The notes below the pieces were generated by a model, which made no database searches, was not told the origin of the DNA, and saw nothing but the letters and a program-made list of their open reading frames with translations. This document shows, piece after piece, positions 39,907-56,300 of a stretch of DNA of 64,000 nucleotides (its first letter is position 1; the number at the start of each line of letters is the position of its first letter). The translations under genes and the position numbers were made by a program. The stretch covers positions 62,001-126,000 of IMG/VR virus record IMGVR_UViG_3300022698_000267; one strand, 5' to 3'.

Positions 39907-40531
39907 AAGTCAAAACATTTCCCTTACTAGAGTAAGTCAAAAATCCTTCTCCAACCAAAATGGATAAAGTATTACTAACTTTACGTTTAAAATTGGCATT
40001 GTCAACCAACCACCCCTCTTCAGCCAAAATCTTTATCAAATCTTCGAAATGTATAATTCCCGGTCCCTCCTTAAAAATTCTAATCAAATTCTTTTTCAAC
40101 GCTCTATAAGGAGCAACATCTTCGGCCCCACGAAACTTCCAAACATCCTTGGAATTAGTAGTGATTTTATTTGAGCAATCGAAATACTCCAAAATCCCGT
40201 CCTCAACCAAGCTGGACAAAGCAGTACGAATATTCTTCTTAAATCCAGCATTACTAATCGGCCACCCCTGCTCAAACAAAATCACCAGCAAATCATTAAA
40301 CGATAAAGTACCCTGTTCCCTTTTAAAAATCGTAATCAAATTCCTCCTTACCGTACTAACAGGAACAAGAATAGACGTCATCTTCTTGCCCTCCTCCCTC
40401 TCTTCCTCCTCCATCTTCTTATGCTCCTCAACTACCATACTCCACTCAAGCCAACCAACTACTTCATCAAGACTTTTTTGCATCGAAACCAAAGAAGAAC
40501 GAATCTTTTCAACATCTTTTCCACTAATCAT
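39893..40531 (-). CDS. Two-repeat winged-helix-like protein (paralog family)
   Basis: Same repeated unit; N-terminal SL.S..KSLDE helix shared. Confidence 0.55.
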   Translation of the reverse strand: MISGKDVEKIRSSLVSMQKSLDEVVGWLEWSMVVEEHKKMEEEEREEGKKMTSILVPVSTVRRNLITIFKREQGTLSFNDLLVILFEQGWPISNAGFKKNIRTALSSLVEDGILEYFDCSNKITTNSKDVWKFRGAEDVAPYRALKKNLIRIFKEGPGIIHFEDLIKILAEEGWLVDNANFKRKVSNTLSILVGEGFLTYSSKGNVLTYAIV

Positions 40532-40809
40532 GACTTATCTCCTCTCTCCAACCACGTACGAATCCTCTGTTTAAAATTCTTCCCATGAATATCCCATCCC
40601 CTCCTAGCAAGAAGAATCATCAAATCCTCAAACGTCAAAGGCTCATCCTCCTCATGAAAAATCTCCTTCAAATCTTTATGCAACGCCTTATAAGGAAGAC
40701 ACTTACCCACCTCAAAAGAAACCCCTCTCTCCTCTGCAACCACATCAATCACAGCATCAAGACTATTTCTAACAGAAACCAAACAAGAATGCAAAACTTC
40801 CAAATCCAT
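40528..40809 (-). CDS. Single-repeat member of the same family
   Basis: PYKALHKDLKEIF..E...LTFEDL..LL...GWDI; start at MDLEVL with SD GGGAGG. Confidence 0.55.
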   Translation of the reverse strand: MDLEVLHSCLVSVRNSLDAVIDVVAEERGVSFEVGKCLPYKALHKDLKEIFHEEDEPLTFEDLMILLARRGWDIHGKNFKQRIRTWLERGDKS

Positions 40810-40822
40810 AAAAATACCTCCC

Positions 40823-41074
40823 CTACTGAACCGGTAAAGTAACAGGAGGAATATCCATACCACCTTCCAACCTGTCAGCACACTCCCTCAAAGCAGTTAC
40901 CATATCACCACGCTCAGCATTCGAAATATAGTTACTAACACCAGGCCTACCAAAATCAAAAACCAACAAAGCAAATCCCATCTCCCCAACAGTCTGATTT
41001 ATAACCTCCTCAATAGACAAACCCAAAATCTTCATAAATTCTTCTGTCTTCCTCTGCTTCTCAATATCATCCAA
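40823..41074 (-). CDS. Conserved small hypothetical protein
   Basis: GFALLVFDFG...NYISNAER.DM..ALRE pattern; SD GGAGG, TTG start. Confidence 0.6.
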   Translation of the reverse strand: MDDIEKQRKTEEFMKILGLSIEEVINQTVGEMGFALLVFDFGRPGVSNYISNAERGDMVTALRECADRLEGGMDIPPVTLPVQ

Positions 41075-41099
41075 AACAAATCCTCCAAAAATATTCAGT

Positions 41100-41770
41100 A
41101 GTAAATCATAGTTTAGTAGATTTTCGACACAAGTTACAGACCGAAATCAAGACGATCCAAAAAAATCCTGAAGAAAAGAAAGTAGAATTTCGACAAAAGA
41201 AGAAGAACGAGTCTTAACCAAAAAAACAGAAAAGAAGAAAAAGAAACCTTACCTAAAGAAAAAATTCTAAAACAAAAAGAAAGTAAAGAAAAAGAAACCT
41301 AATAAGGAAAGGTAAACAAAAAGAAAGGAAGTACCTTATTTGAAAGTAAGGAAAGGGGTAGTCTAGAAGGACTGTATTGATTAGAAGAGAAAGTCTATAA
41401 AGTTTGTTCTAGATATTTTTATAGGTAGAATAGGAGATTTACTTGTATTGTAGGCAGAAAAAACCTCTAGTTTTGTGTAGTGGATGTATTCTAGATGTTT
41501 TTCTAGGAAGTAATGAGGCATTACTTGTATTGTAGGCAGAAAAAGTCTATAGAGTTTACTCTAGATGTTTTTATAGGAAGTAATGAGGGTATTCTACTGT
41601 TTATTGACAGAAAAAACCTCTATTTTAGGAAGACTCATCGAAAAAATTAAAAGTTGCTAAAACCCCATACTGCGGCTTCAAACAATCCCTTCCTCATTTA
41701 TAAGAAGAAATCTGCTATAAAGGCTCTGGAAGTGGACATGAAAATTCTAGAGTCGTTCTAGAAGGAGTCT
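41100..41770. repeat. Non-coding block: A-rich tract then imperfect direct repeats (origin or terminus candidate)
   Basis: TTACTTGTATTGTAGGCAGAAAAA at 41439 and 41521; TCTAGATRTTTTTMTAGG at 41408, 41490, 41560; C/G skew flips here. Confidence 0.7.
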
Positions 41771-42430
41771 AAAGTCATTCTAGAATTTCTGATAGTACTT
41801 CCCAAAAAGATTTTTTAACACTATACTAACGTAAAGTCCCTCAGAGAAGGTGGCAGAGGATTTGGCAAGTTCGTATATAACGAAGGCACATATTACGAAG
41901 GGTAGAAGCAATGCTGTAAAGAATTTTTCCATAGCTTCTGCAACTAAAGGATTATTCCTCACGAAATTCTTTAATAAAAGTTTCATCGTGGGAATTTCCT
42001 TTCCACAGGTTCGAATCTTTTACAATCGAACTTCTTTACTTTACCAGTTGAGAGGTACGTTGTCCCCATATAGTCTGGACATTTCTTTGGATCTATCTGG
42101 TAATTCTTATTTTTATTCTTTCTACATCGTTCACAAAGATCATTTTCATCAAACATACTTTAATCCTCCTTTAACGATGTTTTTCTATTTCGATTCGAAA
42201 GATAAACAATCGAAGTGGAAGATTCCATTTCTTTCGTAACTCTTTTCCTTACATTTTGGGCAGTTTTGTGGAGTGAGTGTATAAAGACCCTTTTTATTAT
42301 GCTTACATTCTGGGCAGACTTCGTTTACTATTTGATTAACTTCCATTTTATACATCCTTTCTTCTAAATGAGGGATTTATTCGCAGTATGTAGGCTAATG
42401 AAGATGCTTCCCAATACCCTTATATACCTT

Positions 42431-42745
42431 TTACCCTTCATTAGCCTGTACATCAGTCTTACTAAATGTAACGCCGTCTTTTTCATTTATATGTTCTCGC
42501 AATTGTTCGATTGCAGATTTATAACCATAAATTGTATCGATAACATCATTAACTTCTTGTTCTGGATATCCTTCATCGATGAGTATTTGTCTAGTCATTT
42601 CAAGAAAGACCTTTGCCTCTTTACTGTTAAAAGCTTTAAGGAAAGCTAGTGTGGATAGAGTACCAGTGGTTTCAGTTAAGATTTGTTGTCTAACTGAAGG
42701 AGTGACTGTTTTGTTTTCAAATAGATTTTTAAGAAGATTTTTCAT
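42431..42745 (-). CDS. Hypothetical protein
   Basis: SD GGAGGT; TACTAAA upstream. Confidence 0.7.
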   Translation of the reverse strand: MKNLLKNLFENKTVTPSVRQQILTETTGTLSTLAFLKAFNSKEAKVFLEMTRQILIDEGYPEQEVNDVIDTIYGYKSAIEQLREHINEKDGVTFSKTDVQANEG

Positions 42746-42780
42746 TGCTACCTCCTCTTCTTCTTTAGTTTAGTATCTTC

Positions 42781-43025
42781 TTTCGATAATTAGTAACTTG
42801 CGTTAACTTAATGCTCAAAGCGACCGCAGGTTACTACGTAACCTGTATATAGAAGATTTCTTCTTTGTCTTTCGAAAATGCGAAAGCTGCGTTAACTATA
42901 TTTCCAAGGCTTTCGAAAATGCGAAAGCTGCGTTAACTAGGTAGAACAAAACTCGGACGAACACTTCGACCGTAAGTTACTACGTAACTTATATATAGGC
43001 GAAAATGAGATAACTGCGTTAACTT
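42781..43025. repeat. Non-coding block with iteron-like repeats and two covarying palindromes
   Basis: 30-nt perfect repeat at 42869 and 42910; TGCGTTAACT x4; CAGGTTAC-TAC-GTAACCTG and TAAGTTAC-TAC-GTAACTTA. Confidence 0.85.
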
Positions 43026-43865: not shown

Positions 43866-43894
43866 TTGACTTTCCATTACAAAACCTATATAAT
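43866..43894 (+). promoter_or_regulatory. Early sigma70-type promoter
   Basis: TTGACT-17-TATAAT. Confidence 0.8.
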
Positions 43895-44243
43895 ATTCGT
43901 AAGTTAAATATAATTTAAATAGTAGCAAGAGGAGGTGAAAATGATACATGATTAATGCTAATCTGGCAGCTCTAATTTCTAGTGGACTTACAACTCTACT
44001 TTCTAAAAACATAGATAATGGGGAAGTCATAGATTCTCAGACCCAAGGATGTACACAGGGATGGAATAAACCCAAGTCAAAATCTAAGGGACGACCTGGA
44101 ACATGGGCCTACGTCGAGAAAGAAGCTCTTGCAGATTTGGATAGAAGCAATGCTCTCAGTGATGAAGAGATGGAAGAAATCTATGCTGCAGCTCGTGCTA
44201 GGGGATATGAACTCTAATTGAATGTGAAGGAGGTAACTAGTGT

Positions 44244-44702
44244 ATGCCAGATGTCTATGTGGAGTACTTAACTAACTACAAGAAGAAAGAATGGGGACCT
44301 TTAACTTATGCCAAACCCGGTGACGCTTGTTTTGATCTTCGTGCTGCCATTAAGAATTCGCAAGTTTTAATGAAGGACCAAGTTGCTGTAATTTCTACGG
44401 GTGTAAAGTTTGCTATTCCGGAGGGTTATGAAATACAAATCCGTCCCAGGTCTGGCTTTGCATCTAAGAATAGTGTCATTATTGTTAACTCGCCTGGAAC
44501 CATTGACAGTGGTTATCGAGGTGAAGTAAAAGTGGCTCTACTTTCTTGCTCCCGTTCGGGGGTTGTTATACAACCTGGTGCCAGAATTGCTCAGGCGAAA
44601 TTGGCAGAAGTTCTTCAACTCAATTTTATTGAGACCAATGATGTTGCCACATCATTTGAGTCTGAAAGAGGTGAAGGGGGATTTGGATCAACTGGTAACT
44701 AA
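44244..44702 (+). CDS. dut: Trimeric dUTPase
   Basis: ACFDL, RPRSG, GTIDSGYRGEV, RIAQ, RGEGGFGSTG. Confidence 0.97.
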   Translation: MPDVYVEYLTNYKKKEWGPLTYAKPGDACFDLRAAIKNSQVLMKDQVAVISTGVKFAIPEGYEIQIRPRSGFASKNSVIIVNSPGTIDSGYRGEVKVALLSCSRSGVVIQPGARIAQAKLAEVLQLNFIETNDVATSFESERGEGGFGSTGN

Positions 44703-44722
44703 CTAAACCGGGAGATAACTAA

Positions 44723-45754
44723 ATGACTTCGGATTTAACTATAATAGCAAATGACAGTTTGGTTCTAGAAAAGAAGATGTTGGGTTTTTTAAAGCATACC
44801 AGATTATTCTTCGAGAACATCATCACTTATCTAAAAGGAAAACGGTTAACTAAAAGCAATTTTCGTATTGAAGACACTTCAGTTGTTCCTAACTACATAA
44901 CTGACATTGAAGAAATTTTGGATAGAGGTGAAGAACTTGTTGTTCTGGAGCATATTGTTAACGAACTTCATCCAAAAAGATGTTTCCTTTTTGATATGAT
45001 GCAGGAGCTAATGAAGAGTGAAGTTCTTTCTGATGAAGAGAGAAACAAGGCTAAATCCATTTGTGATGATTATTTACAGAAAGTTGTTTGGAGACTTTGT
45101 AACTCAGAATTATCTTTGGTAAAGAAAAAAGCTGGAAGTATTGCTCGTGGAGTAACTAGTGTTTCTTTCCAGGATAAAGTGGGTTATGGTTATGAAGGAT
45201 TGTTAAAGGCAGCTCATAAATTTGATTTCGAAAAGGGGATCAAATTTAATACCTATGCTTCTTGGTGGATTTGGGAAAGTATTTTGAATGGATGTAACAA
45301 TGAAATGTACTTTTTGAAGGTTGAAAGTCCAAAACAACAGAAGTACATAAAATTTCTATCATCCAGTCGAAAAAGAGATGGAAAAGAATCCACTCATTTG
45401 TCTTCATCTGAACTATTAGAGATTTATGCAGCATGTAACATTGCTTCTGTATATGGCGAAGATGGTGAAGACCATTCTGATTTGAAGATCGATGATAGTA
45501 ATTCAGAAGTTTTCTACCATAGTAATCCCGAAAACATTTTAAATATTTCTCAGAATCCCAGATCAATGTTAGAAGATACAATAAATACTAAATTGAATAA
45601 GGATGAGAGAAAGATTTTAACTCATTACTATGGTATTTTGGATTGTAGAAAACGATCAGAGAGTCAATTATGTCGTTCCTTTGGTTTTACGATAACACAA
45701 TTGAGAGATAAAATTCAGGAAATTCTCTCTAAGATAAGGGAAGACATGATATAA
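44723..45754 (+). CDS. Phage-encoded sigma70-family RNA polymerase sigma factor
   Basis: Region 2 GLLKAAHKFDFEKGIKFNTYASWWI; degenerate region 4 (L...ERKIL..YYG...IL.KIR). Confidence 0.88.
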   Translation: MTSDLTIIANDSLVLEKKMLGFLKHTRLFFENIITYLKGKRLTKSNFRIEDTSVVPNYITDIEEILDRGEELVVLEHIVNELHPKRCFLFDMMQELMKSEVLSDEERNKAKSICDDYLQKVVWRLCNSELSLVKKKAGSIARGVTSVSFQDKVGYGYEGLLKAAHKFDFEKGIKFNTYASWWIWESILNGCNNEMYFLKVESPKQQKYIKFLSSSRKRDGKESTHLSSSELLEIYAACNIASVYGEDGEDHSDLKIDDSNSEVFYHSNPENILNISQNPRSMLEDTINTKLNKDERKILTHYYGILDCRKRSESQLCRSFGFTITQLRDKIQEILSKIREDMI

Positions 45755-46439
45755 CTACGTGGAGGACACTATGGAAGAAACAAGTAACCCCGCATTCTTT
45801 GTCCCGGTTAATTTTTTGGGTTTTGTAACTATGATGGGAAAAGGAACGGAAGAGGAAAGAGATTCTTTAACAAAATCTCTTACAGAAGTTAGGAAGTCAG
45901 AGGAAGTTCAACGTAAATTCTTCGAAATTTCCAAATTTATATCCGAAAGGTTTGGAATAAATTTCCTTATGGTTCCTAGGTTCTTAGAAATTAGTGATAA
46001 AAATGAACATAAGGACCATATATCTAGCTTTTTAGCCTTTCTTGCAGAGGCAGAAGGTTCTTATGAGGAAGATGATGAAGCAAGTTTGATTCCAAAATGA
46101 CAGATTTAACTAACTCAGATTCTAATCTTCCCGCCACTACTAACTCGGATTCCGAATTAAGTACCGAGTTTTCAGAATCCCTTTCTTATGTTAAGAAAGA
46201 ACTTCTAGATACTCTAGAATATATTGATGGCCAATTGGACGACATCGCAGAGAAGACAAAAGGTGTAACTAGGTTTTCTCGAAATATTTTTGAAATGAAG
46301 AAACTATTTGTTGAGCAGAGATTAAATTTATTGAAACAACTGTCAAGTTTAGCAGTTGATAAGAAGCGTAATGAAAAAGAAGGGGATAAAGATTTACCTA
46401 ATATTTCTGAAATTTTAGGTGCAAAGTAGGAGGTGAGAT

Positions 46440-46904
46440 ATGGCTGATGCCCATCGTTATGAAGATGTAACTCCAGATGTTGTGGAGTTAGTAAATGTAG
46501 TATTAGAAGAGCATTTTGATGAGTTAATTGGAGCTAAAATAAAACCAATTTTCGATACCAAGAAAAGGACTCACGGGGGACGTGTTGTTCTTGGTAGAAT
46601 GCAGAAATGCAACGAGTTGGTAAAGTTTCTAACTAATGATCAAGCAATTTCTCCAGAGGGTTTCGACTTTTTCTTGTATCTCGACAAAAACATTTACCAA
46701 GCAATGCATGAAGAACAGAGAAAAGAATTGGTTTTTCATGAACTTTGTCATTGTGGCGTCGATTTTGATCGAAGCGATCCTTATTATGTAGTACCACACG
46801 ACGTGGAAACGTTCTACAAAGAGATTGAATTTCACGCAGATGATCCACGGTGGTACGAGAAGTTGTCGGTTATAGCGGAGGCCGTTTATGTTGAAACGGA
46901 CTAA
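46440..46904 (+). CDS. Putative phage metallopeptidase
   Basis: LVFHELCHC (HExxH) followed by PHDVE.F. Confidence 0.8.
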   Translation: MADAHRYEDVTPDVVELVNVVLEEHFDELIGAKIKPIFDTKKRTHGGRVVLGRMQKCNELVKFLTNDQAISPEGFDFFLYLDKNIYQAMHEEQRKELVFHELCHCGVDFDRSDPYYVVPHDVETFYKEIEFHADDPRWYEKLSVIAEAVYVETD

Positions 46905-47145
46905 TTTATGCAACTAAAGATTATACCTGTGGAAAACATTAAATCTTTGGATACAGTACTTCTATTTACTGAAGACAAACCGGAAGACTACGTTTTTTCA
47001 CACCTACTATCTTTGGTTGTAGACAAGGAAGATGAAAATGATTTCTTACAGAAGTCATACAAGACTCTTCCAGATTCTACTTTGGTAACTGAAAGAGGTT
47101 GCCATTTTCAAATTGACACTTTAAGTTTATTGGGAGGTTTTACAG

Positions 47146-47454
47146 ATGAAGGACAAGAACAGTTTTTCAGAGGAGTTGTTTAGAAGAATCGAAGAAAAGT
47201 ATCCATCCATGGCCACCAATTTTACAAAAAAGGACGCTGCAACATTGACGAATGAATTCATCGATTGTTTGAAGGACGTCATCAAAGATGGGGAGCCCAT
47301 TCGGTTTCATGGTTTTGGTATTTTTGAATTGTACGCTTCTAAACGAAGAAAGGGGCGAAATCCCCAAACCGGCGAATCGATTGATATTCCGCCAAGAAAG
47401 AAAGTTAAGTTTCGTACATCCAAAAGCTTTGCTGATCAAGTTATCAATCTCTAA
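47146..47454 (+). CDS. hup: HU/IHF family DNA-binding protein
   Basis: GFGIF, RKGRNPQTGESIDIP, VKFRTSK. Confidence 0.95.
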   Translation: MKDKNSFSEELFRRIEEKYPSMATNFTKKDAATLTNEFIDCLKDVIKDGEPIRFHGFGIFELYASKRRKGRNPQTGESIDIPPRKKVKFRTSKSFADQVINL

Positions 47455-47485
47455 CAGAGTTTCCATTTTCCCCTTCCTATTTAAT

Positions 47486-47513
47486 CCCCTGGTAAGCATC
47501 TCCAGGGGTTTTT
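47486..47513 (+). terminator. Intrinsic terminator after hup
   Basis: CCCCTGG/CCAGGGG stem plus TTTTT. Confidence 0.7.
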
Positions 47514-47537
47514 ATATTCCCCCTTAACTTGGTTCAT

Positions 47538-47566
47538 ATTATATAGTCTTGTACATTTTTTGTCAA
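47538..47566 (-). promoter_or_regulatory. Early-type promoter pointing antisense into hup
   Basis: Minus strand AAATAGTTC-TTGACA-17 nt-TATAAT. Confidence 0.8.
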
Positions 47567-47596
47567 GAACTATTTGTATATTTTTTCATAAAATAC

Positions 47597-47625
47597 TTGA
47601 CTTTTCTACACCTTTATTATATATT
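47597..47625 (+). promoter_or_regulatory. Early sigma70-type promoter
   Basis: TTGACT-17-TATATT. Confidence 0.7.
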
Positions 47626-47825
47626 AGTTTACATTTGGAAATCAGAGAGGTTAATTTACTAATGAAAGAAAAGAAACCATCATTGGCACCAGAGACAAAA
47701 GAGTATATACGAAATAAGGTTAAGGAGCTTGGTTCATTGGCAGCAGTTAAGAGATTGTACAAAGAAGACTGTTTGGTTGATAACTTTGCTAACAATTTTG
47801 CCAAACGTTTTTATAAGGATGAAGA

Positions 47826-48179
47826 ATGAAATGTCTACAGTGTGGTCGATGTTGTTTCTATGCTGTAATCATTATTAAGCCAGAATCTATATCAGAAGAT
47901 CTTGATATGGACTGTTTAACTGATGATGACTTAATGGCTTTGGATGGTACAGAGAAATGTCCTCATTTAACTTGGGAAGGACGTAAAGCTTTTTGTAACA
48001 TTCATCATTACGATTGGTTTCCAGATACACCTTGTGGACAGTTTACACAGATCGAAGCATCACCTCATAGTTTTTGTCGTATTGGGAAGAATATGTTAGA
48101 TCCAAAGAATGAAGATTTATGGCGAAGGATTACTTTTAGAACCTGGGAAGATGAAATAGAGGAGACAAATGAAAAATAA
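47826..48179 (+). CDS. YkgJ-like CxxCxxCC cysteine-cluster protein
   Basis: CLQCGRCC, CPHL, CNIH, PC. Confidence 0.7.
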   Translation: MKCLQCGRCCFYAVIIIKPESISEDLDMDCLTDDDLMALDGTEKCPHLTWEGRKAFCNIHHYDWFPDTPCGQFTQIEASPHSFCRIGKNMLDPKNEDLWRRITFRTWEDEIEETNEK

Positions 48180-49080
48180 ATATCAGTCTTTAACTAAAGA
48201 AGAAAGATTTAAGGGATCTTTGGTTGGTTTGGCAACAGGAGACGCATTGGGTGCTTCTCTAGAGTTTATACATACGATACCAAATCCTCCTTTAACTGAA
48301 ATGACAGATGGTTATTGGACTGATGATACATCTATGGCTCTTTGCACTGTTCATAGTCTTATCGACAGAAGGACTTTTGATTTAAGAAATCAAATGGAAA
48401 ATTTTGTCAGTTGGTACACCAGAGGCTTTCTTAGCAGCAGAGGTTACTGTTTTGATATTGGCAACAGAACAAGAGAAGCTTTAGAAGATTACATGTTGCT
48501 TGATCAAATAACTGAAGGAGTAGATCCCCATGATGACAATTTGAGCAATGGTTCATTGATGCGATTGGCTCCAGTACCTTTATTTTATTACAATAATGTA
48601 GAATTAGCAGCAAAGAGAAGTAAACAGCATACATTACTAACTCATCCTAGTCAAATGTGTGTTGATGCGTCTGCATGTCTTTCAACTTTCATAACTTGTT
48701 GTTTTCATGATCATCTAGGGAAACATGCTTTGGTAGAAGATGTTGCTAACTATCGTAACGACCTTTTTCCAAGTTTAAGTAACTGGTTTGATGATTACTT
48801 ACTTAATCCAAGGAAACCAGATACCAGCAAACATGTTGGTTACGTAATGACATCTTTAGAGATGGCCTTGTGGGCTTTTTTAACTACACCTAACTTTGAG
48901 GAAGGATGTATATTATGTGTTAACAATGGTGGTGATACTGATACCTATGCAGCTATATATGGACAGTTAGCTGGTGCCTACTATGGTTACAAAAGTATAC
49001 CAGAGAGGTGGACAAAGAAACTTATTCAACACAAGATTATTTGTGATTATGCTAAGATTCTTTGTGATATAACTGCTTAA
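48169..49080 (+). CDS. ADP-ribosylglycohydrolase (DraG/ARH family)
   Basis: GDALGA, WTDDT, FDIG, NGSLMRLAP, TH, GGDTDT.AAI.GQLAGA.YG. Confidence 0.95.
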   Translation: MKNKYQSLTKEERFKGSLVGLATGDALGASLEFIHTIPNPPLTEMTDGYWTDDTSMALCTVHSLIDRRTFDLRNQMENFVSWYTRGFLSSRGYCFDIGNRTREALEDYMLLDQITEGVDPHDDNLSNGSLMRLAPVPLFYYNNVELAAKRSKQHTLLTHPSQMCVDASACLSTFITCCFHDHLGKHALVEDVANYRNDLFPSLSNWFDDYLLNPRKPDTSKHVGYVMTSLEMALWAFLTTPNFEEGCILCVNNGGDTDTYAAIYGQLAGAYYGYKSIPERWTKKLIQHKIICDYAKILCDITA

Positions 49081-49622
49081 AATATTTGAAATATAACTTC
49101 TGATATGAATTCAATTCTAACTACGTTCTTTGGTAAGTTATCATGTGTATTCCATTCAGGATGATTAATTAGAAAAACTTTTTCCATCCCTTCACTACAT
49201 TGCAAAGCAACATCGATTCTATCATCCGTCCAGAATTTGATGTTGTTTTTCATTAGATACTCAAACTTCTCATGATTGTCTTTCAGAACTAATGCAACAT
49301 CATCACCAAATTGCTTATTACACCATTTCTGTGTAACTTCTTGTAACCCTGGGTACCTAGCAGTAACTATTGGAACAGGTTGACTTGTTAACTTTCGAAT
49401 GGTTTTGATGGCTGTTTTAACTTCTATTTCAGGTTCCAAGTGATTTTTGGTAAGATGTGTTAAAGCATCCCTGATTTCTTGTTTAATCTCCTCCTCAGAA
49501 ACTCCTGGAATAACTATTCTTTCGATAGGACTTTTTATTTCATAGCCCAATCGATTCTTTAACTCAATTTTCATGTAGTCATATGTGTTGACTATTGTAT
49601 CGTCCAAATCAAAAGCAATCAT
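49077..49622 (-). CDS. HAD 5'(3')-deoxyribonucleotidase-like phosphatase
   Basis: IAFDLDDT, IVTAR, K, DDR, WN. Confidence 0.85.
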   Translation of the reverse strand: MIAFDLDDTIVNTYDYMKIELKNRLGYEIKSPIERIVIPGVSEEEIKQEIRDALTHLTKNHLEPEIEVKTAIKTIRKLTSQPVPIVTARYPGLQEVTQKWCNKQFGDDVALVLKDNHEKFEYLMKNNIKFWTDDRIDVALQCSEGMEKVFLINHPEWNTHDNLPKNVVRIEFISEVIFQIF

Positions 49623-49674
49623 AAAACCTCCATTTTTATTAATATTTTAGTATATAAAAATATTCAAATAGTAC

Positions 49675-49703
49675 TTGACTTTTCACCTAATATACTATAT
49701 AAT
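49675..49703 (+). promoter_or_regulatory. Early sigma70-type promoter
   Basis: TTCAAATAGTAC-TTGACT-17-TATAAT. Confidence 0.88.
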
Positions 49704-49731
49704 GGTTTAAATTTAAAAGGGAGGTAGCAAA

Positions 49732-49860
49732 ATGGTCGACAAAGGTAAGGTCTGGTTGAGGTGTATGGAGTGTGGTAATAAGTTTTCACGATCACTTTCC
49801 AAAAGTCTTTACAATGTCAAATGTCCCAAATGTAAATCCTATGATGTGGAGGTGGACTGA
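49732..49860 (+). CDS. 42-aa zinc-ribbon protein (not in ORF track)
   Basis: CMECG...CPKCKS; SD GGGAGGT; first gene behind promoter 49675. Confidence 0.75.
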   Translation: MVDKGKVWLRCMECGNKFSRSLSKSLYNVKCPKCKSYDVEVD

Positions 49861-50076
49861 TGAGAGACCCAAATAGAACAGCATTTTTTATTTTGGACGA
49901 AAGAGAAGAACGTCGAGTTGCCAATCGGGGCATTGCCGCTAGAAACCGGGATTATCGAGAAACCCTCCGGCTTACCGGAGACCGGCGTGCTGCCACCAGA
50001 GCGTACTGTGCCGGTAACAAATGGCTCATGGAGAATGCACGAGCCTGTGGAAATCTTCCCTAACATCCCCTCCCCC

Positions 50077-50104
50077 TACGGGCTCCCGGAAACGGGGGTC
50101 CGTA
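50077..50104 (+). terminator. GC hairpin with GAAA tetraloop
   Basis: TACGGGCTCCCG-GAAA-CGGGGGTCCGTA. Confidence 0.65.
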
Positions 50105-50232
50105 CCCCTCTAAAGTACCTCTATTTTTCCTCATATGAACCTCATTCTATATGCTCTAAGACACAACGACGCATATTTTATCGTCTGTCTTTTCTTTCGC
50201 AAAATAAAGCAGAAATTTTCTTCAAATAATAC

Positions 50233-50261
50233 TTGACTTTTAGTTCAACACCTTATATAAT
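50233..50261 (+). promoter_or_regulatory. Early sigma70-type promoter
   Basis: TTGACT-17-TATAAT. Confidence 0.88.
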
Positions 50262-50288
50262 ATAGGAAATTTAAAAGGGAGGTAGTAA

Positions 50289-50498
50289 ATGGGAGATACA
50301 TCGTATCAGGAAAAAGATTTTGGTGATGAGGAAATATGGGCCAAATGTGAAACCTTGGAACAGTTTGAAGATTGGTGCATCGATGGTTTCTGGGAGGATC
50401 CAGAGGATTTTGAAAGTGATACTGGAATCACATTCGAGGATATCGAAGGCAGATGGTTCCAGTTTGTTCATGATCGGGTCTATATTAAGACAGATTAA
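50289..50498 (+). CDS. Highly acidic early protein
   Basis: 22 D/E vs 5 K/R in 69 aa; SD GGGAGGT. Confidence 0.75.
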   Translation: MGDTSYQEKDFGDEEIWAKCETLEQFEDWCIDGFWEDPEDFESDTGITFEDIEGRWFQFVHDRVYIKTD

Positions 50499-50985
50499 GG
50501 AGGATTAAATGCGACATCTCACAGCAAAAAACAAAGATAATTTTTTCTCTCGTTTGAAAGTTGGTGACAAGTTTACATCTTCTCCAGATGACTTTATTGG
50601 TAAAGATGTTCATCGACTTGCTAAACAGCAGGGCGTTCTGGTTCGGTATTTTCGGCCGGGAACACTAGAATACAAAGAATTTGGCTGCTTCACTTATCAA
50701 GTTACAAGTTACTTGTGTTCCTTGCAGAAACTTAAAGGGTTAACGGTGGATTGTGTACGTGGCATTCGTACTGATCAGAGAATTAAGAGTGGATTTTCAC
50801 CACAATACATTCTATTTACGGATGAGAAAACGTACATGGCATTGGAGGAACAAGATTATTATACTTATCATGATTGTAATTTCAATGCACGTTGCCTTCG
50901 AATAGAAGAAGATGAACGTATGTGGAAAATAATTAAGGAAGATTTGAAACGTTACCCGGAAGCAGACATCGATTAGAGGTTAACT

Positions 50986-51486
50986 ATGGATTATACCATT
51001 GGTCCTGTGAAAAAATGCGTGGGTTGTGGGTTCTGTTGCATGCAAGCACCATGTGCTGCTTCTGTCAGGCTTTACCCTGGAGCTAAGATTTGTCCTCAAC
51101 TTATCTGGGATGAAGCATTGGAGAGGTATTTATGTGGTCTTATGCAACTTCCTGGTTCGGTTGGCCTGGCTTACAAACAGGAGTTGTATGCGGGAGCTGG
51201 TTGCTGTAGCAACTTGAATTCTTGGAGAAGGAACGTAAAGAATAGACATCCAGTTGACAAGAAGGATAAGCTGTTAACTATAGATCCAATGTTTCAACTG
51301 TTTCTTAACTGCCTTGGACGTGAGTGGATAAGCAGTGATGTATTGGTATTAACAGTTTCGGCTTTCATGTTGAAATTAGTTAATCATATGGATATGACTG
51401 AAGATGAAGCACAGAGGTACGGTGAGCTGGTTACCCATTATATGAAAGATAATACACCAAGTTACCTGAAAGAATTTATGGGATAA
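50986..51486 (+). CDS. CxxCxxCC cysteine-cluster protein
   Basis: CVGCGFCC..APC, CPQL, CGL, GCC. Confidence 0.65.
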   Translation: MDYTIGPVKKCVGCGFCCMQAPCAASVRLYPGAKICPQLIWDEALERYLCGLMQLPGSVGLAYKQELYAGAGCCSNLNSWRRNVKNRHPVDKKDKLLTIDPMFQLFLNCLGREWISSDVLVLTVSAFMLKLVNHMDMTEDEAQRYGELVTHYMKDNTPSYLKEFMG

Positions 51487-51500
51487 TATTCAAAAAGTAC

Positions 51501-51529
51501 TTGACATTTTCAAATTTATACTATATAAT
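51501..51529 (+). promoter_or_regulatory. Early sigma70-type promoter
   Basis: TTGACA-17-TATAAT. Confidence 0.9.
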
Positions 51530-51584
51530 ATGAACAAGTGGTTGGGGATAGGGTAAATGTAAATTTTAGAAAAGGAGAAAGGCT

Positions 51585-51869
51585 ATGCTGTTAGATGAAT
51601 TGACTGCGTATTTCGATCTTAAAGCTCAGGCCGAAGAGATTAAGAAACAGATGACTGAGATTCGGGCGTCTATTCAATCTCAATTACCGGGAAATTCCAC
51701 CAAAACGTTGGTTCATACAGAGGATGGTTTAGTGACACTGCAGACGAGATCCCGTCTTAACAGAAAATGTAAGTGGGATGCTTTTGCAGTAGCAAACCCG
51801 GAACTTTACAACCAGGTGGTCACTGAATCTGAAACCACGTATTTCACCATTTCCAAAAAGCAACATTAA
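51585..51869 (+). CDS. Early hypothetical protein (coiled-coil N-terminus)
   Basis: SD AAGGAG; own promoter. Confidence 0.7.
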   Translation: MLLDELTAYFDLKAQAEEIKKQMTEIRASIQSQLPGNSTKTLVHTEDGLVTLQTRSRLNRKCKWDAFAVANPELYNQVVTESETTYFTISKKQH

Positions 51870-51881
51870 AAGGAAGGAGAT

Positions 51882-51899
51882 TAGGGGCTTCGGCCCCTA
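51882..51899 (+). terminator. GGGGC-TTCG-GCCCC hairpin (family also at 52890, 54104, 54865, 55303, 59266)
   Basis: cUUCGg or cUUCAg loop hairpins right after stop codons. Confidence 0.75.
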
Positions 51900-51927
51900 T
51901 TTCTATGTAAAAATATTCAAATAGTAC

Positions 51928-51956
51928 TTGACATTTTTATCAAATTCTGTTATACT
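51928..51956 (+). promoter_or_regulatory. Early sigma70-type promoter
   Basis: TTGACA-17-TATACT with extended -10 TG. Confidence 0.9.
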
Positions 51957-51999
51957 ATAGTTAATGGTTAAGGAGAAAGTTTTAAGAAGGAGATAACAG

Positions 52000-52347
52000 A
52001 TGGAACCAAATATGATTAATGTTGATGAAATTACTCCAACGGCAAAAGATGTCGAAAGAGCAGAAGGTCTTCGATGGCAGCGGAATACTTTCCATGGAGA
52101 TAATTCTCCGTTCAGGGGTCAGGCTGCTAAGATGGCGAAGTTAATCAGGGACCCAAAGAAGCTTGTGCGTAGAGCTAAGGCAGTCTATAACTTATATGGG
52201 TGCAATGATTATTTTGGCGACTTACCCCCTGGACAATGGATAGATCCGGAGTGGAAAGCAACGAAGGATGCTTGGAGACCATTTGCTAATGCTTTGAAGA
52301 AAATGGGATTCTCCTGGACGCAGATCAGGTCCATTTGCAATCGATAA
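52000..52347 (+). CDS. Early hypothetical protein
   Basis: SD AAGGAG; own promoter. Confidence 0.7.
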   Translation: MEPNMINVDEITPTAKDVERAEGLRWQRNTFHGDNSPFRGQAAKMAKLIRDPKKLVRRAKAVYNLYGCNDYFGDLPPGQWIDPEWKATKDAWRPFANALKKMGFSWTQIRSICNR

Positions 52348-52372
52348 TTTTTAAAAAATCTTCATAAAGTAC

Positions 52373-52401
52373 TTGACATTTTATTAAAATTTTGTTATAC
52401 T
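52373..52401 (+). promoter_or_regulatory. Early sigma70-type promoter
   Basis: TTGACA-17-TATACT with TG. Confidence 0.9.
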
Positions 52402-52455
52402 ACTTTTAAGTGGTTAGGGAAATTAAACGTTAATTTTAAAGAGGGAGGTAACAAA

Positions 52456-52884
52456 ATGGTTTTAAATGAAATGTCTGTTCAGGCCCTGAAGAAGTTCCAG
52501 GAGAAGAAAACCAGCAACAAAGATGTGGACAAGCGGTTTGAAGCAATGGGTGAGCTGGTCCAAGAATTGTCGGAGGTTTATGAGATTGCTTGTCCTCGGC
52601 TTCGTATGAAAGATATCGACGGTTCCTATTCCGGTGGGTCTACGTTCGATCCTGATGAGAATATCATCACCATGCGTGGAAAACTCTCCATTATAACCCT
52701 TCTTCATGAATTTGCTCATGCTTTGCTGCATTCTTCTGCACCGGATTTGCATGATACCAACCGCCGGGATTCAGAAGGGTTCTGCCGAATTTGGAGCGTT
52801 CTCCTTTTCAAAACCGTCTACCCCGAACAATTTGCCAAGCTTTACTATAATGGTGGAAGTTACATTCGCCAGAGAGCAGCTTAA
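52456..52884 (+). CDS. Zincin-like HExxH metallopeptidase domain protein
   Basis: TLLHEFAHAL and downstream E. Confidence 0.65.
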   Translation: MVLNEMSVQALKKFQEKKTSNKDVDKRFEAMGELVQELSEVYEIACPRLRMKDIDGSYSGGSTFDPDENIITMRGKLSIITLLHEFAHALLHSSAPDLHDTNRRDSEGFCRIWSVLLFKTVYPEQFAKLYYNGGSYIRQRAA

Positions 52885-52919
52885 CTTTATGGGGGCTTCG
52901 GCCCCCAATGGAGACAACA

Positions 52920-53573
52920 ATGCTACTGAATATTGATGAAGCAAGAAAAAAAGCGGCAAGTAAACTGTTGTCGTTGTCCTCTTTGAATGAATCCTTTACC
53001 TGTGATGTTTGTGGAGCCCCTTACAAAAGAAAGATTGCAGCCATTAAACATCTTTACAGGGAACATCCAGATGTGATACAACGACTTACTGAAACGGTGA
53101 TGCGAGAACATGCAGAACAACAAAGAGATAATTTTATTCGGGAACTTGCAATGCTTCCCTCTAGGGCCATTGAGAAGTATGAAAAAGACAAAAAAGATTT
53201 TATCGATAAGGTTAAAGATGATTACACCTTTATCTATTACGCTCGCCAGAGACTAGAAAAACTTATAAAGTTGGAAGCAACAGTTGCATTACACAAAGAA
53301 ACCTCCGAATTTATTCGAAATGCTCATTGTTCCTGGAGAGAATTGTTGGCAGATCTGGAGGCAGAGAGAGACAAAAAAATATATGAACTCATCATCTTTC
53401 CAGCGGAGCACAATTCCACTTCGGCGATCAGTAATGTTATAGAAATGTGGAGGTACAAAGCACAATGTAACTTCTACAAGAAAGATGTTTCCAGTGCAAT
53501 GGGAGATTACATTCATACTCTGAGAAAGATAATTGAAGCAGATTCCTTCTTAGCTTTCGCCCCTGTCCAATAA
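52920..53573 (+). CDS. C2H2 zinc-finger-containing protein
   Basis: FTCDVCGAPYKRKIAAIKHLYREH. Confidence 0.65.
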   Translation: MLLNIDEARKKAASKLLSLSSLNESFTCDVCGAPYKRKIAAIKHLYREHPDVIQRLTETVMREHAEQQRDNFIRELAMLPSRAIEKYEKDKKDFIDKVKDDYTFIYYARQRLEKLIKLEATVALHKETSEFIRNAHCSWRELLADLEAERDKKIYELIIFPAEHNSTSAISNVIEMWRYKAQCNFYKKDVSSAMGDYIHTLRKIIEADSFLAFAPVQ

Positions 53574-53590
53574 TAATCAGGAGGTAACAA

Positions 53591-56300
53591 ATGGATTTAA
53601 TAATTGAATTAGAAAGAAACGATGACTTTTCGATTAATGATTGGGGATCAGCTCAGTATTGTGGAGCCAAAGCATTTTTCGATTTACTCGATAAATATCG
53701 TAAAGATTCTTCTTTGGATGATTTGTTAGCGGAGTTTGGAATCGTTGTTGGTTATGACCATAAACTTCCGTTCGAACAAGTTAAGATGGAAATTCGTACG
53801 TCGTTTGATTTCGATGATCCCACAATTCAGGATATTCGTAATGCTGAGACCATTGAGGATATTTTCGAAGCTTTAAAGGATGCAAGTTGGGATCTTTGGT
53901 CGGCTGCTTCCTTCGTAGCACAACATTGTTTTCTTAACTTAACTGTAACTGGTGTTCCAACAGCACATAGTGTTGGTCCTGTTGGCAACCAAATGGTGCA
54001 ATCTGAAAATTATCTCACTGGTCTTTACTGTGCTCTTCTAGTCGAGTTTGAGTACGTAACTGATTCCAGTTGTTTCGCTAATTTCGATACCTAGAACTCA
54101 AGGATAGGGGCTTCAGCCCCTATTTCTATGTAAAAATATTCAAATAGTACTTGACAAATCCTCCAAATTCTGTTATACTATGTTTAAGTGGTTGGGAGAA
54201 CCTTTTACAGGAGGGTACTATGGAAGATTGGAAACTGGAGAAAATGATCGAGCTTTCAGACATTCTCGAGACACCTGATGGTTTTCGTCGGGAAGAGGAT
54301 TTTGGATGTGATAATTCTAAGAATCCTTGGATGTCGGAACCACCTTCGATCAAATTTTTTGCAGAAGATGGCAGTGTCGAGGTGTTTTTTCGTTTCGATT
54401 TCAGCGATTACGATAGAAAACAGGAGCTGACGATTTGTGGGACGACGAATTTCGTGATGCCGAATGGCAAGCGATTCACCTTCGATCGGCGCGGAATCAG
54501 CGATTCTTTTTATTTTGGCACACAATCGTACAATGAGCCGCTCAGTTCTGCTAATAAAATTTTGGCAGAGCAGATTGAATTGGCGCGGGATGGCATCATT
54601 CGCAGAGCAGACGCTGAAGACGTTCCTGGTCTTCAAGGTTTCAACATCACTCAGGAGAAGAAGAAGAGGATGACAGAGGAGTTGAAAGCGGGAAGAGTCG
54701 TTCAACTTGCCCCTGGAGGTATGGGAATTGGTTATCATCTTTCGAAACTGAAGAGCAATTTGAATCCTGGTCGATGGGGTGCTAGAAAGGCTGCTGACGC
54801 GATGGCAAAATTTTTCAATTGTACGACTCTCTGGATTGAGGAATTTGATCACGATTAAAATTTAAGGGGCTTCGGCCCCTATTTCTATGTAAAAATATTC
54901 AAAAAGTACTTGACAAAACGAACAAAATCTGTTATACTATATTTAAGTGGTTGGGGAGAACATTTAAATAGGGGGTACTAAAATGGGAGTTAATATCGAA
55001 GTTAAATTTACTGGTGAAAATGGTTTGGATTTGGTGGTACCAGTATCTGGTCCCGGCAATTGGAAGCTTCGTACCCAGACCGATTTTGGTTACGTGCTTC
55101 AAGGATACAATATGCACCGAGAACTTTTTATCCTTCTCAATGTTGACGATTGGAGAGTTAATATTGTTACCACCATTGTTGCCCACGGAGAGGGTATTTT
55201 CAGCAGAGGTGTAGACTTGGATCCCGAAGCAGATGATTTTGATGATAATTACTCCAATGTCGTGAATGAGATGCTCGCTAATTTGCCCTATGTTTAAGAT
55301 TAGGGCTTCAGCCCCATCTAAAGGAGGAGTAAACAGATGAGAGGAACCGTAAACGTTACCACAACTATTGGTTGGAGAGTAGTTGAGCACAAAAGTAAAG
55401 CTGGTGGGTTTGTTGGGTATATCGACGCAACTTACGATCGGTTGATTGAGCTTCTGGGTAAACCAAAGGGTTCCAATCCTTTTGGTAAAGTGAAAGCCGA
55501 GTGGGTTGTTCGTTTTACTACGGGAGACGAGTTTTACATTTACGATTTTAAAAGTAACAAAGAACCAGAGGATAGAACTTACTGGCATGTTGGTGGTAGT
55601 CGAAAGGCTGCTGAATGGTTTTTCAATAGTCTGGGAATTACAATGTATCGGGATCGATAAAATATTCAAATAGTACTTGACAAAACGAACAAAATCTGTT
55701 ATACTACATTTAAGAGGTTAGGGGAAAATACATAATAAAGGGAGGTAGCAAATGAGAAGAGAATGGAATGGAACGATGAACGTTGGAAATATGGAGCAGA
55801 AGATAATTTTCCTTACGGAGATGCAGGGTCAGTTGTCGGATGGTATGTGGGAGAATACAGAACCTTTTGACCATTGGCATCCGTGGTGTTCGTTGAATTG
55901 GGATACAGTCCACGTTGAACCCAATAACACAGGTGTAACCGGAAACCTTACTGCTGCTCGCAAACGGGGTTATCGATTTAACAGTACTGAGCTGTTGGAG
56001 ATTGTGGGCGAACGCATCATCGTCAAGATCAACCTGTGGAAGAAGCTTGGCGATAAATTCCTGGAGATTCTGGAAAAGAATCATTGGCTTATTCCGGATG
56101 ACGGCCGGCTTCCAACATCCAAAGATGAATATTGGACCAAGAAACGAGAAAAGTTGATCGAGCTTGGATTGACTGAAGAAGTAATGAGGGACGCCCTGGA
56201 AAATGGATCTTATACCATGAAGGATCTTCGAAATGACTGTGCTGCGTTAACTAAGGTTCTCAAAGCTAATGCAAAGGAACCTGCACAAGAAGCTGCTTAA
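53591..56300 (+). CDS. Early hypothetical genes (53591, 54220, 54983, 55337, 55752)
   Basis: Each with a strong SD; most behind their own promoter; ORF 54151 should start at ATG 54220. Confidence 0.65.
54151..54179 (+). promoter_or_regulatory. Early sigma70-type promoter
   Basis: TTGACA-17-TATACT with TG. Confidence 0.9.
54910..54938 (+). promoter_or_regulatory. Early sigma70-type promoter
   Basis: TTGACA-17-TATACT with TG. Confidence 0.9.
55677..55705 (+). promoter_or_regulatory. Early sigma70-type promoter
   Basis: TTGACA-17-TATACT with TG. Confidence 0.9.

What the first reader, a model, noticed from the sequence alone, without database searches (positions are those of the whole stretch)
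47167..47575. Perfect early promoter, leader, RBS and ATG aimed antisense through hup
Seen: minus-strand TTGACA-17-TATAAT with the family's upstream AAATAGT.C box and a TTAAGGGGGA leader, back-to-back with the 47597 promoter; then a hairpin, GGAAGGGG and ATG (47466) opening a 99-codon frame fully antisense to hup. It is the only leftward copy I found with both consensus hexamers. Inference: antisense control delaying the dut-sigma-hup operon, a short sRNA ending at the hairpin, a real overlapping gene, or the stump of a lost cassette.
Basis: partly seen in the sequence, partly recalled or inferred. Interest (0 to 1): 0.6.

Follow-up and report, generated by a model that had tools for sequence, protein, structure and literature searches.

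The report
Conserved leftward early promoter facing hup
A real, evolutionarily conserved leftward copy of this jumbo phage's early promoter sits just past the terminator of its HU-like gene and has no gene of its own, so it most likely makes non-coding antisense transcripts, while the 99-codon frame it opens looks like a mirror-image by-product of hup.

Summary
The site is the only minus-strand member, in the whole 273.6-kb phage genome, of a family of about 45 near-consensus early promoters.

- **The hairpin.** It is hup's own intrinsic terminator, with its T-run on the + strand only. It lies inside the leader of the leftward unit.
- **Relatives.** Six metagenomic lineages carry hup at 60-85% amino-acid identity, and synonymous sites are saturated in all pairs but one. 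A homologous back-to-back promoter module occurs in five lineages counting the window. In two of them the leftward arm drives real 2-3-gene cassettes that converge on hup. In the window and two others it abuts the hup terminator with no cargo. One relative lacks the module entirely.
- **The 99-codon frame.** It is the exact codon-register mirror of hup. It is broken in four of six relatives and has no homologues. It shows no excess synonymous or antisense-protein conservation, and hup's TTG-leucine bias explains why it is open.

Best reading: the orphan leftward arm of a conserved bidirectional promoter module, producing convergent antisense transcription over hup. No RNA run was listed, so activity and effect are inferred. 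Modest interest.

The parts
47567..47586 (-). A/T-rich upstream box of the promoter family (AAAAAATATACAAATAGTTC). It overlaps by 10 bp the upstream box of the rightward promoter.
   Evidence: This stretch contributes +17.4 bits of the PWM score, and the flank-only score is unique on the minus strand of the genome. Family consensus.
47561..47566 (-). -35 hexamer TTGACA
   Evidence: GTCAA is invariant across five lineages in alignment A4.
47538..47543 (-). -10 hexamer TATAAT, 17 nt from the -35. The predicted start of transcription is about 47530-47534.
   Evidence: ATTATATA is invariant across five lineages. The start site is inferred, not mapped.
47511..47530 (-). Leader box 1 (AAGTTAAGGGGGAATATAAA). 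It resembles the family leader TTTAAGTGGTTGGGGAAA with a 3-nt shift.
   Evidence: The ungapped PWM gives no credit here (-1.7 bits); the similarity is read from the sequence.
47486..47513 (+). Intrinsic terminator of hup: CCCCTGG, a 9-nt loop, CCAGGGG, then TTTTT. It lies inside the leftward leader. Read leftward it has no U-tract.
   Evidence: hairpin present in both folds; + strand -14.3 kcal/mol. A homologous hairpin plus T-run follows hup in L004, L009, L005 and L003.
47464..47485 (-). Post-hairpin ATTAAATAGGAAGGGGAAA plus ATG. This is an SD-like box and start codon like those of real family cassettes (compare the leader of the 54910 cassette).
   Evidence: ATTAA, a purine-rich SD-like stretch and an ATG follow the hairpin in all five lineages, but the peptides are unrelated.
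47167..47466 (-). 99-codon frame plus stop, in exact codon register antisense to hup codons 9-102. Judged a shadow ORF.
   Evidence: no constraint; no relatives; no family; pLDDT 57.
47146..47454 (+). hup, the HU/IHF-type DNA-binding protein. It is the last gene of the dut-sigma-...-metallopeptidase-x-hup operon.
   Evidence: Pfam PF00216 E=1.4e-23, PHROG 379. The operon is syntenic in L002-L006.
47597..47625 (+). Rightward partner promoter TTGACT-17-TATATT, serving the gene at 47662-47829.
   Evidence: 24.1 bits. Its UP box and -35 are invariant in five lineages.

Best explanation
The site is the leftward arm of a conserved bidirectional (back-to-back) host-type early-promoter module. In related phages the homologous arm transcribes a variable cassette of two or three small leftward genes that converge on hup. 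In this phage, and in the L004/L009 lineage, the slot is empty. The promoter therefore fires straight into hup's terminator hairpin, which cannot terminate efficiently in that direction, and onward antisense through hup.

The likely product is a non-coding convergent/antisense transcript. It would lower or trim expression of hup, the last gene of the operon, by polymerase collision and RNA duplex formation. It might also insulate the downstream cassette from read-through. It would be made at the same time as the operon itself rather than delaying it. The 99-codon frame is the mirror of hup. It may be translated at some level because an SD-like box and ATG are present, but it is not a conserved gene.

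**Shown:** the sequence signals, family membership, uniqueness on the minus strand, homology and conservation of the module, real leftward genes in relatives, and the absence of coding constraint on the antisense frame.

**Inferred:** promoter activity, read-through of the hairpin, and any effect on hup.
For: - **Family membership and uniqueness:**
- **The module is homologous across lineages.** Alignment A4 across the window, L004, L009, L005 and L007 has the minus -10 (ATTATATA) and -35 (GTCAA) invariant, and the plus UP box and -35 invariant. The spacer sequences differ but stay 17 nt long.
- **Divergence is deep.** Codon identity at conserved residues is about 0.45-0.55 in hup, sigma and the metallopeptidase for all pairs except L004-L009.
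- **The leftward arm has a job in relatives.** In L005 and L007/8 it is the only promoter-like site upstream of 2 and 3 called minus-strand genes lying between it and hup. Those genes are real. L005_133 and L007_97 are 62% identical (E=7e-41). L007_59 has a 60%-identical homologue in the window at 49860-50063.
- **The hairpin is directional.** It has a T-run on + only. No minus-strand terminator-like site was found between 41850 and 47500.
- **The unit has a complete cassette head.** Without the A5 run plus hairpin (28 nt) the leader is 43 nt long, with the family's two boxes.
Against: - No transcript evidence: no sequencing run was listed.
- L002 lacks the whole module between the same two genes, so it is dispensable in at least one lineage.
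- Consensus hexamers could be kept by gene conversion from the ~45 plus-strand copies rather than by selection on this copy.
- Sense and antisense promoters are of the same class, so a timing role is unclear.
- An SD-like box and ATG kept after the hairpin in five lineages is not explained by a purely non-coding role.
Confidence: 0.5

Rival explanations
1. Neutral vestige. This is a cassette head (promoter, leader, SD, ATG) left behind when a leftward gene cassette was deleted. It may still fire, but it has no selected role.
For: - Relatives L005 and L007/8 carry leftward cassettes in the same slot.
- One such cassette gene now sits on the plus strand 2.4 kb away in the window. L002 lacks the module altogether. 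Cassettes and modules therefore come and go, as with PeSLs (PMC2839356).
- The unit has every cassette signal but no gene body.
Against: - Hexamers and the 17-nt spacing are intact in the window, L004 and L009, which have no cargo, although synonymous sites between the window and L004 are saturated.
- On the hup tree the cassette-bearing L005 and L007 form one clade (95/96). A single gain is therefore at least as parsimonious as several losses.
Confidence: 0.27
2. Short sRNA. Transcription from about 47532 stops or is trimmed at the hairpin, giving a stable RNA of about 45-50 nt. This RNA is complementary to the 3' end and terminator of hup mRNA, in the manner of lambda oop.
For: - A stable hairpin lies 22 nt from the predicted start.
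- The promoter-hairpin arrangement is conserved in L004 and L009.
Against: - Leftward, the stem is followed by AUUAAAUAGG (L004: UAUUAAAAGG), not a U-tract. The T-run is on the + strand.
- In L005 the same hairpin lies downstream of two leftward genes and is followed by another SD-like box and ATG.
Confidence: 0.1
3. Real overlapping gene. The 99-aa frame is a protein-coding gene overprinted antisense on hup and expressed from an early cassette head.
For: - The promoter, SD-like box and ATG are in the family's arrangement.
- L004 has a 108-codon frame in the same register, and L003's register is fully open.
- Antisense-stop codons in hup are fewer than neighbouring genes' codon usage predicts: P=0.05 (window), 0.015 (L003), 0.023 (L004).
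- Only 4 of 104 similar-sized genes in the genome have a mirror frame at least 90% open.
Against: - The frame is broken in L009 (sister of L004; stops at hup codons 34 and 62, and its ATG is in another frame), in L005 (9 stops), L002 (6) and L007 (1, mid-gene).
- The start codon position and N-termini are not conserved.
- Synonymous codon identity in hup (0.48-0.54) is no higher than in sigma or the metallopeptidase (0.49-0.60).
- Antisense-protein identity equals the simulated expectation: window-L004 39 against 36.6 (sd 4.2); window-L003 41 against 39.2 (sd 4.3).
- With hup's own pooled codon usage (TTG-Leu bias) the openness is unremarkable, P=0.07-0.24.
- No homologue, Pfam, PHROG or Atlas match. 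The single-sequence fold has mean pLDDT 57, and the other four models 36-43.
- SD-to-ATG spacing is only 3 nt.
Confidence: 0.08

Closest known systems
PeSLs (promoter-early stem-loops) of T4-type phages (Arbiol, Comeau & Krisch 2010, PMC2839356; Comeau et al. 2014, PMC4122927)
   Same: - Many repeated composite elements with a strong sigma-70-like promoter, an AT-rich upstream region, a stem-loop terminator, and an SD plus ATG.
- They are packed into a region of small ORFan genes.
- Relatives differ by insertion, deletion or swap of cassettes at these elements. Here L002 has no module, L005 and L007 have cargo, and the L007 59-aa gene is relocated and inverted in the window.
   Different: - Unrelated phage lineage and sequence.
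- In a PeSL the stem-loop lies upstream of the promoter. Here the hairpin lies downstream of the leftward promoter, inside its leader, and belongs to the convergent hup gene.
- This copy is inverted relative to all ~45 others and carries no ORFan.
- Recombination activity was not tested.
Lambda oop RNA (pO promoter, antisense to the 3' end of cII); from general knowledge, not checked in a paper here
   Same: A constitutive host-type promoter just downstream of a gene fires back across that gene's 3' end. It is a model for down-regulating the last gene of an early operon through an RNA duplex.
   Different: - oop has its own intrinsic terminator and a defined 77-nt product. Here there is no leftward U-tract and no terminator-like site for more than 5 kb.
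- No functional data exist here.
Transcriptional interference between convergent phage promoters (e.g. coliphage 186 pR/pL; theory in PMC5001618)
   Same: Face-to-face promoters whose polymerases collide. The stronger one suppresses the other.
   Different: Here the convergent partner lies about 3.7 kb away, at the head of an operon, with a terminator between. Nothing has been measured.
Shadow (mirror-frame) ORFs opposite real genes; debate on antisense proteins (PMC7457138, PMC9927249)
   Same: A long open frame in exact codon register opposite a gene that happens to avoid TTA, CTA and TCA codons. It is longer than the true gene, so a length-greedy ORF picker chooses it.
   Different: This one also has a consensus promoter, an SD-like box and an ATG, so translation cannot be excluded.

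Membership tests
This genome's early-promoter cassette family (host sigma-70/sigma-A type) | TTGAC(A/T), 17 nt, TATA(A/C)T | tested here: met
   12/12 match with a 17-nt spacer.
This genome's early-promoter cassette family (host sigma-70/sigma-A type) | Upstream box aaaaa(g/t)TTCAAAtAGTAC abutting the -35 | tested here: met
   +17.4 bits over the upstream 20 nt. It is the only minus-strand position in the genome with a flank score of 10 or more.
This genome's early-promoter cassette family (host sigma-70/sigma-A type) | Leader TTTAAGTGGTTGGGGAAA followed by an SD box and ATG about 25-55 nt after the -10 | tested here: inconclusive
   Both boxes are recognisable by eye, and the leader is 43 nt if the 28-nt A5 run plus hairpin is removed. 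The ungapped PWM gives -1.7 bits for the downstream 25 nt, and the actual distance to the ATG is 71 nt.
This genome's early-promoter cassette family (host sigma-70/sigma-A type) | Heads a protein-coding gene of its own | tested here: not met
   The only frame is the mirror of hup, with no constraint and no homologues.
This genome's early-promoter cassette family (host sigma-70/sigma-A type) | Active early in infection | not testable with these tools
   No sequencing run was listed.
PeSL-type mobile promoter/terminator cassettes | Composite of a sigma-70-like promoter, an AT-rich upstream region and a stem-loop terminator, ending in an SD and ATG | tested here: inconclusive
   All parts are present, but the order differs: the stem-loop lies downstream of this promoter. 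Plus-strand family members do show terminator then promoter, e.g. 51882/51928 and 54865/54910.
PeSL-type mobile promoter/terminator cassettes | Marks the points of insertion, deletion or replacement between related phages | tested here: met
   The module is absent in L002, cargo-less in the window, L004 and L009, and carries 2-3 genes in L005 and L007/8. One cassette gene is relocated and inverted.
PeSL-type mobile promoter/terminator cassettes | Recombination between copies (mini-circles) shown experimentally | not testable with these tools
   This needs inverse PCR on infected cells.
cis-antisense regulatory RNA (oop-like) | A promoter downstream of the target gene, reading antisense into its 3' end | tested here: met
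   The predicted start lies about 77 nt past the hup stop, on the opposite strand.
cis-antisense regulatory RNA (oop-like) | Its own intrinsic terminator, giving a discrete short RNA | tested here: not met
   No U-tract follows the hairpin leftward. No minus-strand terminator-like site lies between 41850 and 47500.
cis-antisense regulatory RNA (oop-like) | A measurable effect on target mRNA or protein | not testable with these tools
   No expression data are available.
Overlapping antisense protein-coding gene | The frame stays open, with a conserved start, in relatives | tested here: not met
   The frame runs from the post-hairpin ATG in the window and L004 only. L003's register is open but is not reached from that ATG. 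It is broken in L009, L005, L002 and L007.
Overlapping antisense protein-coding gene | Extra constraint on the sense gene's synonymous sites, or on the antisense protein | tested here: not met
Rho-independent terminator (the hairpin) | A GC-rich stem followed by a T-run on the transcribed strand | tested here: met
   + strand: 7-bp stem, 9-nt loop, then TTTTTATATT. The scan tool missed it because its loop limit is 8. This is met for hup and not for the leftward direction.
HU/IHF DNA-binding protein family (hup) | Match to Pfam PF00216 above the gathering score | tested here: met
   83.4 bits against a cut-off of 22.4, E=1.4e-23.

The most novel reading that the evidence does not exclude
The leftward unit expresses a young protein-coding gene born by overprinting on the antisense strand of the phage HU gene. 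It would have been captured by a complete early-cassette head and be present in two deeply diverged lineages (the window and L004) but already lost in L009. A milder version is that translation of the antisense RNA is itself what is selected, which would explain why an SD-like box and ATG follow the hairpin in all five lineages although the peptides are unrelated.
Probability: 0.07. Interest if true: 0.8.

Novelty: new member of a known kind. Interest (0 to 1): 0.35.

Why it matters
If the promoter is active, it gives a clean natural case for studying how a phage sets the dose of its own nucleoid protein, or insulates neighbouring early cassettes. The case is a conserved, cargo-less promoter arm whose only target is the 3' end of an HU gene.

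The comparison also shows that an uncultivated jumbo-phage lineage shuffles small early genes at repeated promoter/terminator elements, much as T4-type phages do with PeSLs. That would extend the mechanism beyond T4-like phages.

Practically, it warns annotators that the 110-codon mirror frame is longer than hup and is easily miscalled.

Tried and rejected
- **Sequencing runs.** None was listed, so read laying was not used and no transcript test was possible.
- **Close phage relatives.** DNA search of the phage collection found nothing. tblastn with hup or sigma found only distant HU and sigma genes.
- **IMG/VR scans.** hup, sigma and the hup alignment gave only one or two distant, non-syntenic loci (L001 context).
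- **Metagenome contig scan.** The hup alignment used patterns that were too generic and returned 80 ordinary HU genes at 45% identity or less. They were not used.
- **Family and look-alike searches for the antisense frame.** Rfam found nothing relevant in 46000-49000. Pfam, PHROGs, the word-based protein search and the Atlas found nothing for the antisense protein. The fold was low-confidence.
- **Big representative search.** It was not spent. Hits to a mirror of HU genes would not be informative, and the verdict does not rest on absence of relatives.
- **Replication-origin idea.** This was the notion of a divergent promoter plus AT-rich DNA serving as an origin. GC skew simply follows gene strand, with no turn at genome position 109.5 kb.
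- **'Delay of the operon'.** The operon's own promoter is of the same host-type class.
- **Polarity of cassette loss or gain.** The hup tree resolves only L004+L009 and L005+L007.

Full report
**Setting.** The window is bases 62001-126000 of a single 273,563-bp virus record with 35.8% G+C. No close relative exists in the phage or IMG/VR collections. The finding lies between hup and a 55-codon gene at 47662-47829. hup (47146-47454, +) is an HU/IHF-type protein with Pfam PF00216 E=1.4e-23. It is the last gene of a dut-sigma-x-x-metallopeptidase-x-hup operon.

**Observation.**
- TTGACA (47566-47561), 17 nt, TATAAT (47543-47538), preceded by ACAAATAGTTC.
- Leader TTAAGGGGGA (47527-47518).
- A 7-bp/9-nt-loop hairpin (47508-47486).
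- GGAAGGGG (47477-47470) and ATG (47466).
- A 99-codon frame ending at 47167.
- Back to back with it, the rightward TTGACT-17-TATATT at 47597-47625.

**Is it more than chance?**
- Near-consensus promoters occur 17 times in the window against 0.91 expected, and 16 of them are on the + strand.
- Genome-wide they form a family of about 45 copies, with a conserved upstream box (TTCAAAtAGTAC) and a conserved leader (TTTAAGTGGTTGGGGAAA). Almost all lie between genome positions 105.8 and 156.7 kb, and all are on the + strand.
- A matrix built from the plus-strand copies alone finds exactly one minus-strand site in 273.6 kb. That is this site, at 36.2 bits against a shuffled maximum of -3.7.
- Without the hexamers its flanks still score +16.1 bits, against a genome mean of -71 (sd 17). 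That is again unique on the minus strand, and is owed to the upstream box.

**The hairpin.** On the + strand the stem is followed by TTTTTATATT. It lies 32 nt after the hup stop, so it is hup's intrinsic terminator. The scan tool missed it only because its loop limit is 8. Read leftward it is followed by AUUAAAUAGG, a poor U-tract. No minus-strand terminator-like site occurs between 41850 and 47500. A leftward transcript would therefore mostly run on into hup and beyond.

**The cassette head.** If the A5 run plus hairpin (28 nt) is set aside, the leftward leader is 43 nt long. It has the same two boxes as real cassettes such as the one at 54910. The unit is thus a complete cassette head with hup's terminator sitting inside its leader.

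**Relatives.** The word-based protein search found six 102-aa hup relatives at 60-75% identity. Their contigs were fetched as L002-L009. The operon is syntenic in them. Divergence is deep: codon identity at conserved residues is about 0.45-0.55 for hup, sigma and the metallopeptidase in all pairs except L004-L009.

| Lineage | Leftward / rightward -35 | What lies between the leftward promoter and hup |
|---|---|---|
| Window | 47566 / 47597 | nothing; abuts the hup terminator |
| L004 | 4461 / 4480 | nothing; abuts the hup terminator |
| L009 | 939 / 959 | nothing; abuts the hup terminator |
| L005 | 5150 / 5210 | two called minus-strand genes (133 and 84 aa) |
| L007 (= L008) | 1812 / 1843 | three called minus-strand genes (87, 59, 97 aa) |
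| L002 | no module | same two flanking genes as the window, separated only by a hairpin |
| L003 | unknown | contig ends 56 nt past the hairpin |

- **The module is homologous.** Across the five lineages that have it, the minus -10 (ATTATATA), the minus -35 (GTCAA), and the plus UP box, -35 and -10 are invariant. The spacers differ in sequence but keep 17 nt.
- **The cassette genes are real.** L005_133 and L007_97 are 62% identical (E=7e-41). L007_59 has a 60%-identical homologue on the plus strand of the window at 49860-50063.
- **The module is a presence/absence polymorphism.** L002 shows this.
- **Polarity is unresolved.** On a hup tree, L004+L009 (100/99) and L005+L007 (95/96) are sister pairs and the rest is unresolved. 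It cannot be decided whether the cassette was lost here or gained in the L005/L007 clade.

**The 99-codon frame.** It is in exact codon register with hup, so its stops correspond to TTA, CTA and TCA codons in hup. The window has one such codon (Ser8), which ends the frame.

Counts of such codons in the relatives:
- L004 has one, at codon 11, giving a 108-codon frame whose ATG lies 48 nt past the hup stop.
- L003 has none, but its post-hairpin ATG opens a separate 82-codon frame that ends before hup.
- L009, the sister of L004, has two, and its ATG is in another frame (20 codons).
- L007 has one, in mid-gene.
- L002 has six.
- L005 has nine, and its post-hairpin ATG opens only 7 codons.

Tests for coding constraint:
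- Against neighbouring genes' codon usage the depletion looks mildly significant: P=0.05 (window), 0.015 (L003), 0.023 (L004).
- hup genes prefer TTG for leucine. With their pooled usage the openness is unremarkable, P=0.07-0.24.
- In this genome 4 of 104 genes of 80-130 codons have a mirror frame at least 90% open.
- hup's synonymous sites are no more conserved than those of sigma or the metallopeptidase.
- Antisense-protein identity matches simulation: 39 against 36.6 (sd 4.2) for window-L004, and 41 against 39.2 (sd 4.3) for window-L003.
- There is no homologue, Pfam, PHROG or Atlas hit. The single-sequence fold is poor, with pLDDT 57.

I conclude it is a shadow ORF, although some translation cannot be excluded.

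**Mechanism.**

*Shown:* a conserved, homologous bidirectional promoter module; a leftward arm that has real cargo in two lineages and none in three; and a unidirectional terminator between it and hup.

*Inferred:* the leftward arm is recognised by the same host holoenzyme as the ~45 plus-strand copies and fires early. Its polymerases pass the hairpin and meet those finishing the operon. This would give antisense RNA over hup and head-on interference strongest on the operon's last gene, and possibly a roadblock against read-through into the next cassette.

The operon's own promoter (43866; homologous sites in L003 and L005) is of the same class. The effect would therefore be dose-setting rather than delay.

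One caution applies to the conservation argument. Gene conversion from the many plus-strand copies could keep the hexamers at consensus without selection on this copy.

**Unexplained.** An ATTAA, SD-like and ATG string follows the hairpin on the minus strand in all five lineages with this hairpin type. In L005 it lies downstream of the cassette genes. The peptides it would start are unrelated and are 7 to 108 codons long. Possible explanations:
- a remnant of a lost leftward gene;
- selection for translation as such;
- a plus-strand constraint just upstream of the terminator.

**Comparison with known systems.** The family as a whole behaves like the PeSLs of T4-type phages, which are repeated promoter/terminator composites at which ORFan cassettes are gained, lost and swapped (PMC2839356, PMC4122927). 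This copy differs in being inverted, cargo-less, and in having the stem-loop downstream of the promoter. As an antisense device it resembles lambda oop in placement, but it lacks a terminator of its own. It is not a member of any curated RNA family.

**Verdict.** This is a new member of known kinds (phage divergent/antisense promoters and PeSL-like cassettes), not a new category. Interest is modest (0.35) and would rise if 5'-end mapping and a -10 knockout showed control of the phage HU dose.

**Tool use notes.** Some loci come from human-gut metagenomes; they are microbial HU genes and were not used further.

Noticed in passing
window 43866-62782 (+); genome 105.8-156.7 kb and 215271: There are about 45 plus-strand copies of one early-promoter family, with a conserved upstream box and a conserved transcribed leader (TTTAAGTGGTTGGGGAAA). 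Each heads a small gene. The role of the conserved leader, whether as a regulator or as an RNA-processing site, is unknown.
   Followed up: partly
window 51882-51956 and 54865-54938 (+): The terminator AGGGGCTTCGGCCCCT is followed by TATTTCTATGTAAAAATATTCAAA and then a family promoter. This is a PeSL-like terminator/promoter composite, and it is repeated.
   Followed up: partly
window 54910, 55677, 56377; and 57601, 58248 (+): These groups have identical 29-nt promoter cores. That suggests recently duplicated (paralogous) cassettes or gene conversion between copies.
   Followed up: no
window 49860-50063 (+) versus L007:1319-1498 (-): A 59-67-aa protein (60% identity, E=2e-16) lies in the leftward cassette next to hup in L007. 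In the window it is on the plus strand 2.4 kb to the right. Cassettes therefore move and invert between relatives.
   Followed up: partly
L002:4310-4405: This relative has hup and the homologue of window gene 47662-47829 with only a hairpin between them and no promoter on either strand. The ~110-bp bidirectional module is a presence/absence polymorphism.
   Followed up: yes
L003:4310-4600: About 270 nt containing several palindromes lie between the hup stop and its terminator. This stretch holds an 82-codon minus-strand frame of low-complexity composition that was not called as a gene. Its nature is unknown.
   Followed up: no
window 47464-47485 (-) and the matching places in L003, L004, L005, L009: An ATTAA, SD-like and ATG string follows the hup terminator hairpin on the minus strand in five lineages, although the frames it opens are unrelated (7-108 codons).
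   Followed up: partly
window 47167-47499 (-): The mirror frame (110 codons from the first ATG) is longer than hup (102 codons). A length-greedy ORF picker chose it instead of hup, so it is an annotation trap.
   Followed up: yes
window 49077-49622 (-) and 49675-49717: This is a real-looking 181-aa minus-strand gene, convergent with the ADP-ribosylglycohydrolase-like gene at 48169-49080. Its only promoter-like site is a weak leftward TTTAAA-17-TATATT that overlaps the plus-strand family promoter at 49675.
   Followed up: no
genome 95-105 kb (window about 33000-43000): GC skew turns negative over a minus-strand gene block just upstream of the early-cassette region. Skew follows gene strand throughout, and there is no turn at the finding.
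   Followed up: partly
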